NCBI GenBank assembly: GCA_977020255.1
Contig: CDROCS010001585.1
Span: 496,001 to 560,000 of the forward strand
Length of the DNA: 64,000 nt
Origin: Obrimoposthia wandeli
Lineage: Eukaryota
Direction of reading: 5' to 3'
Under the pieces are notes generated by a model, which was given only the letters and a program-made list of their open reading frames with translations, made no database searches and was not told where the DNA came from. Shown here piece by piece: positions 24,301 to 58,511 of the stretch (positions are counted from its first letter, which is position 1; each line of letters opens with the position of its first letter). The position numbers and the translations under genes are program-made.

Positions 24301-25329
24301 ATATACATGTCAAATCTTTATGTTGTATATAAAAATTGTTTTCTGACCATGCTGACGTCTCAAATATTTACGAATGGGAATTTCTAGTAACATTTTCGAA
24401 ATTAAAACTTATGTGGACTATGCTTTTCCATCAAAGGAAAAAATAAAAGATTTTATTTTTAAGCAGTGTAATTGTAAAATAAAATTAATAAATATTATTA
24501 TTACATAAGCAAAACCTTTTTTATTATATTAAAGCTTATTTTAGAATCGAAGAGTAAATTAAATTAAAAAGTTGGCCTAAATTTCTGAAGAATTACAGTT
24601 CAAAATATTATACCCAATTACAGACAAGTGAATATTGGGTTTAGCAAATATTTACCAAGATCTATTTTGTTCTTGGATCGATATGGAATGATAGTCAACC
24701 ACTGCCAAGAAATTTGAAGTGACCCCACTTAACAACTACGAAGCAAACATTCCAGGACTTATTTTACCATCAAAACCAGTAAGAAAAAAGAATTAAAAAT
24801 TCCTAAATATATATACTTAATACTTTGAAAACTCAAATTGAAAATTTATAAATTAATGTTATTACAGGGAAATGTATTATTGTGAAAGCTAGAAAAATTG
24901 GAATATTTACATATAATATACGTAGCATTAGCATGATGAAGGATTTTAAAAACTATTTTTCAAAAAGATTATGTGTTTCTGAGCCATCCTTATTCCTACT
25001 TCATTTGTTTGAAATCCGTTTAAAATTTTATGAGGCAAAATGGATTTTAATTAAATTTATTTATTACTTTGAAAAAAAAGCTTTTTACTCCTAAACCACG
25101 TTTCTGATTTCTTTGGTCAATACACAATAACATCTAGAGCTCTGTGCTGAGAGCTTTTCAAGCAACGGAGTTTTTTTGTTGGAAAATCGTCAGCGGCGAT
25201 AAATAAAAATAATAAAAAAATCTGTTTAATATCAAGGTTTGACCGTCTTATTTAACCAAGTCATCCCACATCGTCAGTGTGTCTTAAAACTGGCCATGTT
25301 TCTTTTCTCATCTTATTTCTATTTGTCAT

Positions 25330-25760
25330 TGCAAGCTATTGTCAAAATTAGAGGGGGAGAAAATGAAAAGAATGAGGATTGTGAACCTGTGTACGATTCA
25401 AAATAGCTTAGCCATGTGGACCAGAGAGAGAGTCGAAGATGCCTTTGTGACGGTTGAAAATTCTTCGTTGTGTGGTAGAAGATGTAGTGCGATGGTACAA
25501 TGTGTAACCGTATCTAAGGGGTCTTAAAATCACGGTGTCATGTGAAGTAATAATAACGTTTGCTTCTTAATTGAGAAAGAAGGGGCCATTCGATCTGTGG
25601 TCGAGTCTTCCTTAGTTTTCTTATAAAATTGACATTATTATTGTTATCTCTGGCTTCGTCGGAATCTCCACTAAGAAGTCAGACATAAAAAGCCATATTC
25701 CTGATGAGCCCGATAGGGCGAAGCAGGTGCAAGACTGTCGGATTTGGACACATTAAAATA
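25330..25760 (+). mobile_element. Probable 3' end / pseudo-LTR of a Penelope-like element
   Basis: The weak translation TRERVEDAFVTVENSSLC resembles the GIY-YIG C-terminus (R..KEAI.I...PSLN). It is followed ~250 nt later by a type I hammerhead, the arrangement expected for PLE ends. Confidence 0.4.
25693..25747 (+). ncRNA. Type I hammerhead ribozyme motif (A15.1>G variant)
   Basis: Stem I ccatattc(25693-25700)/ggatttgg(25740-25747) has 6 WC, 1 GU and 1 mismatch. Core CTGATGA at 25701-25707. Stem II GCCC-gata-GGGC at 25708-25719. GAAG at 25720-25723 (consensus GAAA). Stem III CAG-gtgcaaga-CTG. GTC triplet with predicted cleavage after C25739. Confidence 0.85.
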
Positions 25761-25779
25761 ACCATTATCAAGCAAAATG

Positions 25780-26040
25780 CCAAAGTGCTTAAATCCACAA
25801 AAATTCAATGAATTTATTTAAAAGGAATAGGATTTTCAATGGGATAATTAATATTCCCAGCAACGAAACCTTTCTTGAAACGAGATATCCGTGTTAGGAT
25901 GAGCTGGATAATTATCATTAACAAGACAAACTTTTCAATTTTTATTGTTAACTCATTGTCAAATCCCCGAGCCAATTCTTTCCATATTGTACTGTTTATC
26001 CATGCATTTCTATGTCAGTTATAGTTATTGTTTGGAAGAT
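25780..26040 (-). mobile_element. pogo/Tigger DDE_1 fossil
   Basis: Minus strand AWINSTIWKELARGFDNE...KVCLVNDNYPAHP (AWMTS.IF.EWL..FD / LLLDN.PAHP). Confidence 0.55.

Positions 26041-33046: not shown

Positions 33047-58511
<25,465 letters not shown>

What the first reader, a model, noticed from the sequence alone, without database searches (positions are those of the whole stretch)
25693..25747. Type I hammerhead ribozyme fold in intergenic DNA
All three helices and the catalytic core are visible. Stem I is ccatattc/ggatttgg, followed by CUGAUGA, stem II GCCC(GAUA)GGGC, GAAG, stem III CAG(8 nt)CUG and a GUC cleavage triplet (cut after 25739). The only core deviation is A15.1>G, which turns the A-U pair into G-U and probably weakens or abolishes cleavage of this copy. 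Type I hammerheads are established components of Penelope-like element pseudo-LTRs and of small non-autonomous retrozymes in animals. A weak GIY-YIG-like tail ~250 nt upstream favours a Penelope end. If the family has intact, tandem or circular-RNA-producing members, it would be a self-cleaving retroelement family possibly not yet described in this lineage. It also lies ~1.1 kb downstream of, and antisense to, the unknown gene.
Basis: partly seen in the sequence, partly recalled or inferred. Interest (0 to 1): 0.8.

Follow-up and report, generated by a model that had tools for sequence, protein, structure and literature searches.

The report
Decayed hammerhead ribozyme in LTR fragment
The motif is a real but mutated, probably dead hammerhead ribozyme in a broken end-repeat (LTR) of an old virus-like jumping gene, and that gene family carries the ribozyme backwards, on the strand opposite its own genes, in thousands of copies.

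Summary
On its own it is weak. It fails Rfam, and its lowest-energy fold is not the hammerhead. Homology settles the question: window 25578-25862 is a copy, 71-81% identical to its relatives, of a dispersed repeat whose other members carry intact type I hammerheads. The stems covary and the core is invariant apart from position 7, which is free to vary. A model built without the window copy hits it at 65 bits.

The repeat is neither a Penelope end nor a retrozyme. It is the first 285 bp (the 5' part of the LTR, probably U3) of an LTR. Young relatives are 12-14 kb Ty3/gypsy-type elements with TG..CA LTRs that are 99% identical, a 4-bp target duplication, a primer binding site, a PR-RT-RH-IN pol and a viral fusion glycoprotein gene. 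In both elements examined, the hammerhead lies antisense to the genes, about 120-200 nt from the LTR start. The genome holds 4558 intact core motifs against 0 in the control.

The window copy is a truncated relic, most likely of a solo LTR, and is almost certainly inactive. No GIY-YIG remnant lies upstream. No RNA data were available. This scan had already noted the antisense hammerhead-in-LTR arrangement elsewhere in this genome. I found no paper describing it.

The parts
25578..25862 (-). Truncated fragment, most likely of a solo LTR. It is the first ~285 bp (the 5' part, inferred U3) of an old LTR family. The LTR sense strand is the window's minus strand.
   Evidence: Matches 71-81% identical copies elsewhere in the genome. 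It is collinear with the LTR 5' ends of complete elements. Homology stops at 25578, and the sequence to the left is single-copy.
25856..25862 (-). LTR 5' terminus. It reads TGCTGGG on the minus strand; the family form is TGTTGGGAA.
   Evidence: All copies share a sharp common boundary here. In complete elements this is the TG start of both LTRs.
25693..25747 (+). Degenerate type I hammerhead ribozyme, antisense to the LTR. It has G at 15.1 (25723) and a broken fifth pair in stem III (G25727). The predicted cleavage site is after C25739.
25644..25688 (+). Decayed remnant of the long hairpin that sits directly 5' of hammerhead stem I in all families.
   Evidence: Alignments. The intact 20-bp hairpin in a relative is shown, and the weakened fold here.
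25774..25789 (+). Conserved box AAAATGCCAAAGTGC(A/T)T, 3' of the ribozyme and shared by all LTR families.

Best explanation
Window 25578-25862 is a dead fragment of an LTR: the first 285 of roughly 850-960 bp, most likely from a solo LTR. It comes from an old family within a large group of Ty3/gypsy-type retroelements that carry an envelope gene. The LTRs of this group begin TGTTGGGAA and hold a conserved module about 110-215 nt inside that end. The module consists of a long hairpin, a classical type I hammerhead ribozyme and an AAAATGCCAAAGTGCAT box. The hammerhead reads on the strand opposite to the element's genes, so it can only act on antisense or read-in transcripts.

Shown: the homology, the LTR nature of the relatives, the antisense orientation, the covariation and the decay of this copy.

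Inferred:
- In active elements, antisense RNA crossing the LTR cuts itself after GUC. This detaches the capped leader from RNA complementary to the element's interior. [quoted passage not shown]
- The window copy does nothing. It has A15.1>G in the invariant core, a lost stem III pair and a competing CCUG/CAGG pairing, and the rest of its LTR is missing.
For: Family membership:
- relatives are 71-81% identical.
- a family model built without this copy scores it at 65.1 bits, E=1.5e-18.

The hammerhead is real in the family:
- Relatives pass the Rfam Hammerhead_1 threshold.
- 83-85% of cells pair, against 30-46% when the partners are slid, and 9 pairs change on both sides.
- The core is invariant except at position 7, which is U, C or A.
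- The minimum-energy fold of a young copy is exactly the hairpin plus the three-way junction, z=-6.8.

LTR nature and orientation:
- LTR-type hits occur as same-strand pairs 9-13 kb apart.
- The element at C2299 has 1.04-kb LTRs that are 99% identical, TG..CA ends, a CTTC target duplication and a primer binding site starting TTGGTG. All its ORFs are on the plus strand, while the hammerhead is on the minus strand.
- Pfam finds PR-RT-RNaseH-IN and a viral fusion glycoprotein.
- A second element on C8 is 82% identical inside and has the same orientation. Its LTR aligns with the first only over the 151-bp module.

Abundance:
- 4558 intact core motifs against 0 in the control.
- 1449 motifs lie at a fixed distance from the CCCAACA terminus, against 2 in the control.

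LTR ends in the window's own family:
- 4 of 15 copies show CA plus a 4-5-bp target duplication 840-964 bp from the TG start. I estimate about 0.4 expected by chance; this is an estimate, not a computed control.

Decay of this copy.
Against: - No complete element of the window's own old subfamily was found. Its LTR status rests on homology of the first 285-440 bp to proven LTRs and on suggestive target duplications only.
- The window copy is truncated, so it has no testable target duplication of its own.
- No RNA data exist for this organism in the tools. Antisense transcription, cleavage and any role are therefore untested.
- That G at 15.1 abolishes cleavage comes from general hammerhead mutagenesis knowledge, not from a test here.
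- Copies within a family are related by descent, so part of the covariation signal reflects a few ancestral changes.
Confidence: 0.8

Rival explanations
1. The repeat is the pseudo-LTR of a Penelope-like element, or a non-LTR retrozyme mobilised by one, with the ribozyme in the sense orientation.
For: Type I hammerheads in animals are so far described in exactly these two settings (PMC7761336, PMC7229834, bioRxiv 10.64898/2026.07.22.740005). Copies look 5'-truncated when read on the ribozyme strand.
Against: - No GIY-YIG or RT signal lies upstream, and that DNA is single-copy.
- Helix III is a 5-bp stem, not the minimal Penelope form.
- There are no tandem copies.
- Relatives are bona fide LTRs of gypsy-type elements with the ribozyme antisense.
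Confidence: 0.04
2. The window's old subfamily is not an LTR. It is a SINE-like non-autonomous element that reads on the ribozyme strand, is copied by target-primed reverse transcription, and merely shares a captured module with the LTR families.
For: - On the ribozyme strand there is a sharp common 3' end, while the far ends vary among copies.
- No paired copies of this subfamily appeared among the 40 scored hits.
Against: - Shared features extend beyond the ribozyme to the terminal TGTTGGGAA and the AAAATGCCAAAGTGCAT box, in the same order and spacing as in proven LTRs.
- Candidate CA ends with 4-5-bp target duplications occur at 840-964 bp.
- A close relative (L037) has a glycoprotein-like ORF downstream in the LTR sense.
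- There is no poly(A) or simple-repeat tail.
Confidence: 0.12
3. A chance match to the hammerhead consensus, with no biological ancestry.
For: It fails Rfam, its fold is no better than shuffles, and loose core patterns occur by chance.
Against: The family model hit at E=1.5e-18, and dozens of homologous copies with intact ribozymes.
Confidence: 0.01

Closest known systems
Plant LTR retrozymes (Cervera, Urbina & de la Pena 2016; reviewed in PMC7761336)
   Same: - A hammerhead is embedded in each LTR.
- Target duplications are 4 bp.
- A primer binding site and polypurine tract are present.
- They are linked to the Ty3/gypsy machinery.
- Two ribozymes bracket a unit-length RNA.
   Different: In plants the ribozyme is type III and reads in the sense of the element. 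The element is small (about 1 kb) and non-coding, and its RNA circularises. Here the ribozyme is type I and antisense, and the elements are 12-14 kb and autonomous. No RNA evidence is available.
Animal non-LTR retrozymes (PMC7229834)
   Same: A classical type I hammerhead with a stable helix III, in an AT-rich repeat of a genome that the scan's notes call an animal's.
   Different: Retrozymes are head-to-tail arrays of 150-400 bp without LTR, PBS or PPT. Here the copies are dispersed, single within each LTR, and part of autonomous LTR elements.
Penelope-like element pseudo-LTR hammerheads (Cervera & de la Pena 2014; Lunse et al. 2017, as cited in PMC7761336)
   Same: A type I hammerhead inside a terminal repeat of a retroelement.
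   Different: Penelope hammerheads are minimal (almost no helix III), act as dimers in tandem and lie in the sense orientation next to an RT/GIY-YIG ORF. None of this holds here.
Rfam Hammerhead_1 (RF00163)
   Same: Same core, and the same three-helix topology with helix I open. Young relatives score 35-38 bits.
   Different: The window copy has G at 15.1 and falls below the threshold.

Membership tests
Type I hammerhead ribozyme (RF00163) | Core C3 U4 G5 A6 N7 G8 A9 and G12 A13 A14 | tested here: met
   CUGAUGA at 25701-07 and GAA at 25720-22.
Type I hammerhead ribozyme (RF00163) | A15.1-U16.1 pair followed by H17 | tested here: not met
   G25723 gives G.U, while C17 is present. In the A1 alignment 27 of 30 rows have A-U here. 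In A3, which leaves out the window copy, all 22 relatives have A-U.
Type I hammerhead ribozyme (RF00163) | Three helices with helix I open, supported by covariation | tested here: met
   For the family, 85% of cells pair against 30-46% when slid, and 9 pairs show double changes. In the window copy helices I and II are present, and helix III is reduced to 3 standard pairs plus a G.U.
Type I hammerhead ribozyme (RF00163) | Score at or above the Rfam gathering threshold | tested here: not met
   The window has no hit. Relatives score 35.3-38.5 bits against a cut-off of 34.
Type I hammerhead ribozyme (RF00163) | Self-cleavage | not testable with these tools
   This needs in vitro transcription or mapping of RNA ends. 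No RNA runs are available.
Penelope-like element pseudo-LTR | Adjacent RT plus GIY-YIG ORF, or its remnant | tested here: not met
   No Pfam family is detectable in any frame of 25150-25640, beyond one irrelevant 12-bit match at E=0.2. That DNA is single-copy.
Penelope-like element pseudo-LTR | Minimal hammerhead lacking helix III, in tandem pairs | tested here: not met
   Helix III has 5 bp and a 6-7 nt loop in the family. There is a single motif per repeat.
Animal non-LTR retrozyme | Head-to-tail arrays of 150-400 bp units, each with a hammerhead | tested here: not met
   The window holds one copy only. None of the first 100 of 4558 genome hits has a same-strand neighbour within 1 kb.
Animal non-LTR retrozyme | Abundant small circular RNA | not testable with these tools
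   No RNA runs are on offer.
LTR of a Ty3/gypsy-type retroelement | TG..CA termini, short target duplication, and paired copies flanking PBS, PR-RT-RH-IN and PPT | tested here: met
   Met for the relatives: C2299, C8 and many same-strand pairs.
LTR of a Ty3/gypsy-type retroelement | The same features in the window's own copy and subfamily | tested here: inconclusive
   The TG start is present (25862, minus strand). The copy is truncated, so it has no second end. 4 of 15 subfamily copies show CA plus a 4-5-bp duplication at 840-964 bp. No complete element of this subfamily was seen.

The most novel reading that the evidence does not exclude
The window copy is a fossil of a retroelement lineage that keeps, under selection, a self-cleaving type I hammerhead on the antisense strand of its LTR. 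I found no paper describing such a pairing of ribozyme and retroelement. The ribozyme would process antisense or read-in transcripts. It might blunt double-stranded-RNA or piRNA-based silencing by uncapping RNA complementary to the element. Alternatively it might release unit-length antisense RNAs with ligatable ends, as retrozymes do on the sense strand.
Probability: 0.45. Interest if true: 0.75.

Novelty: new variant of a known kind. Interest (0 to 1): 0.45.

Why it matters
The locus itself is an ordinary dead repeat and needs no further work. The family behind it is more interesting.

So far, classical type I hammerheads in animals have been tied to Penelope-like elements and to tandem non-LTR retrozymes. 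Ribozymes inside LTRs were known only as sense-strand type III motifs in small non-coding plant retrozymes. Here thousands of intact type I hammerheads sit in the LTRs of autonomous gypsy-type elements that carry an envelope gene, and they sit on the antisense strand. They form the one island that stays alignable between LTRs that have otherwise diverged beyond recognition.

If cleavage of antisense transcripts is confirmed, this would be a new use of a self-cleaving RNA by a retrovirus-like element, and possibly a counter-measure to RNA silencing. It also means that hammerhead hits in this genome should not be annotated by default as Penelope or retrozyme.

Tried and rejected
- Rfam at curated thresholds found nothing in the window. 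The permissive scan gave only a sub-threshold Hammerhead_3 hit.
- My own first reading was a SINE-like or Penelope-mobilised element, because copies look 5'-truncated on the ribozyme strand. I dropped it after the scan's earlier notes prompted a test for LTRs, and that test came out positive.
- I looked for a second copy within 10 kb on one side of each of three old-subfamily loci and found none.
- The hairpin's G.U pair cannot be used to decide which strand folds. Another family has A.C at the same position.
- Two searches for sequencing runs returned only DNA-type runs kept as contigs. I did not use read laying, because contigs cannot show RNA ends or strand.
- A protein-atlas look-up of pol gave no clue to the host lineage. 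The organism stays unidentified.
- The core-like motif at 54873-54912 (minus strand) has no homology to the family and no proper helices, so it is a chance match.
- Alignment A2 used wrong coordinates for four sequences. I replaced it with A3.

Full report
**Observation.**
- Stem I is 25693-25700 paired with 25740-25747.
- CUGAUGA is at 25701-07.
- Stem II is GCCC(GAUA)GGGC at 25708-19.
- GAAG is at 25720-23.
- Stem III is CAG/CUG around an 8-nt loop.
- U16.1-C17 is at 25738-39.

On its own the motif is not convincing.
- Rfam finds nothing at curated thresholds.
- The permissive scan finds only an 18.9-bit Hammerhead_3 match.
- The fold is no better than shuffled sequence, and the minimum-energy structure pairs CCUG with CAGG instead of forming the junction.
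- A core-only pattern matches ten times in the window against three expected.

**It is a member of a repeat family with intact hammerheads.**
A search of the window's own 1.35-Gb assembly shows that window 25578-25862 is a dispersed repeat with copies 71-81% identical. The flank at 25150-25577 is single-copy.

Many copies carry an intact CUGAUGA...GAAA...GUC. The genome's best Rfam Hammerhead_1 hits are homologous to the same repeat. Young copies pass the Rfam threshold at 35.3 and 36.5 bits.

On two alignments of the 60-nt motif, 83-85% of cells form standard pairs, against 30-46% when the partners are slid. Nine of 17 pairs change on both sides. Stem III switches between CAGU/ACUG, CGGG/CCCG and CCGG/CCGG. 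A15.1-U16.1 and C15.2-G16.2 are invariant among the 22 relatives. Across families the only variable core base is position 7 (U, C or A), which is the one free position of the hammerhead core. A covariance model built without the window copy finds it, and nothing else in the 64 kb, at 65.1 bits and E=1.5e-18.

The motif is therefore a hammerhead by descent. Relative to the family it carries A15.1>G and a lost fifth pair of stem III. Together these create the competing fold.

**What the repeat is.**
I first read the family as a SINE-like or Penelope-mobilised element, because copies share a sharp end 3' of the ribozyme and vary at the other end. Earlier notes of this scan pointed to LTRs, so I tested that.

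Read on the other strand, the sharp end is TGTTGGGAA.... A younger subfamily, 88% identical to the window over the hairpin and half the ribozyme, occurs as same-strand pairs 9-13 kb apart.

I fetched one such pair, C2299:175400-190400. It has these features:
- LTRs of about 1.04 kb that are 99% identical
- TG...CA ends and a CTTC target duplication
- a primer-binding-like TTGGTGAGCCCGAAG right after the 5' LTR, and a short purine run before the 3' LTR
- every long ORF on the plus strand

Pfam identifies protease, RVT_1, RNase H and integrase in Ty3/gypsy order. It also finds a viral fusion glycoprotein upstream of pol and an RNase_T-like exonuclease downstream. The hammerhead lies on the minus strand, about 180 nt from the LTR start.

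A second element, on contig C8, is 82% identical over 7.6 kb of its interior and has the same arrangement. Its LTR aligns with the first only over the 151-bp hairpin-plus-hammerhead module. A third LTR family, which gave the best Rfam hits, also ends ...CCCAACA about 150 nt 3' of its ribozyme.

Genome-wide, the exact pattern CTGANGAGNCCNNNNGGNCGAAAC occurs 4558 times, against 0 for the reversed control. About 30 of the first 100 hits form same-strand pairs 11-16 kb apart. The ribozyme's 3' half, followed at 160-190 nt by CCCAACA, occurs 1449 times against 2.

**The window's own subfamily.**
No complete element of this old subfamily appeared among the scored hits. Even so, its copies share with the proven LTRs the terminal TGTTGGGAA, the AAAATGCCAAAGTGCAT box, the ribozyme and the hairpin, all in the same order. 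Four of 15 copies have CA followed by a repeat of the 4-5 bp that precede the TG start, at 840-964 bp. I estimate about 0.4 such cases by chance; this is a rough estimate, not a computed control. One relative has a glycoprotein-like ORF downstream in the LTR sense.

I conclude, at about 80% confidence, that 25578-25862 is the first third of an LTR, most likely a solo LTR, whose sense strand is the window's minus strand. The remainder has been lost.

The Penelope or retrozyme reading fails on each feature I could test.
- No GIY-YIG or RT signal lies upstream.
- Helix III is not minimal.
- There is no tandem arrangement.

**How it probably works.**
- Shown: the ribozyme strand is antisense to the element's genes, and the module is the conserved island of otherwise unalignable LTRs. 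In a young copy the minimum-energy fold is exactly a 20-bp hairpin abutting a three-way hammerhead (z=-6.8).
- Inferred: RNA made across an LTR in the antisense direction, from an antisense LTR promoter or from host read-in, cleaves itself after GUC. For a 3' LTR this happens just before the transcript enters the element's interior. The antisense interior RNA is then left uncapped with a 5'-OH. With a ribozyme in each LTR, a unit-length antisense RNA with ligatable ends could form, which mirrors the plant retrozyme geometry on the other strand.
- Open: whether this limits silencing, yields circles, or is a tolerated hitch-hiker. No RNA runs exist in the tools for this organism.

The window copy lacks the invariant A15.1, and from established hammerhead mutagenesis it should be essentially inactive. 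It has no evident role at this locus.

**Comparison with the literature.**
Reviews and primary papers place animal type I hammerheads in Penelope pseudo-LTRs (minimal form) and in tandem non-LTR retrozymes. LTR-borne hammerheads are placed only in plant retrozymes, where they are type III, sense-strand and non-autonomous (PMC7761336, PMC7229834, bioRxiv 10.64898/2026.07.22.740005). Full-text searches found no report of a hammerhead in the LTR of an animal gypsy-type element. The library covers open-access papers only.

**Earlier notes of this scan.**
This scan had already noted the same arrangement on other DNA of this genome: 97 notes mention a hammerhead. My tests agree with those that call it antisense and LTR-borne.

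**Verdict.**
The locus is a decayed relic. The family is a new variant of the known association between hammerheads and retroelements.

Noticed in passing
L044:527-10000 plus L045 (C2299:175926-189913): This young 13.9-kb LTR element has an unusual gene order. After the 5' LTR comes an unknown 459-aa ORF, then two ORFs matching Pfam Monjiviricetes_fusion (a viral fusion glycoprotein). These lie upstream of the PR-RT-RH-IN pol. An RNase_T/DEDD exonuclease-like ORF follows pol, before the 3' LTR.
   Followed up: partly
L046:388-700 compared with L044:527-830: Two elements are 82% identical across 7.6 kb of interior, yet their LTRs align only over the 151-bp hairpin-plus-hammerhead module. The module is the conserved island of the LTR.
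   Followed up: partly
L019:1534-1590 (minus strand); window 25644-25688: A near-perfect 20-bp hairpin sits directly 5' of hammerhead stem I, and an AAAATGCCAAAGTGCAT box follows the ribozyme. Both are conserved across LTR families. Their roles are unknown; they could act in the RNA or as a DNA-level enhancer.
   Followed up: no
L044:1380-1620 and the 3' parts of L022-L029: After a TATA-like CTATAAATAGC, the 3' part of these LTRs holds tandem repeats whose sequence and copy number differ between copies; the period is about 78 bp in the one element checked by self-alignment. The two LTRs of that element differ by one or more repeat units.
   Followed up: no
L020 vs L023 and L037 vs L038: In each pair the 3-kb loci on different contigs are 99% identical across their full length. 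This suggests recent segmental duplications or haplotype duplicates in the assembly.
   Followed up: no
L029:667-1141 and 1294-1794: Two LTR copies of the young subfamily lie in the same orientation about 630 bp apart. This could be a tandem or a nested LTR arrangement.
   Followed up: no
window 54873-54912 (minus strand): A CTGACGAGGCC...GAAAC string resembles a hammerhead core. It has no proper helices and no homology to the family, so I judged it a chance match.
   Followed up: yes
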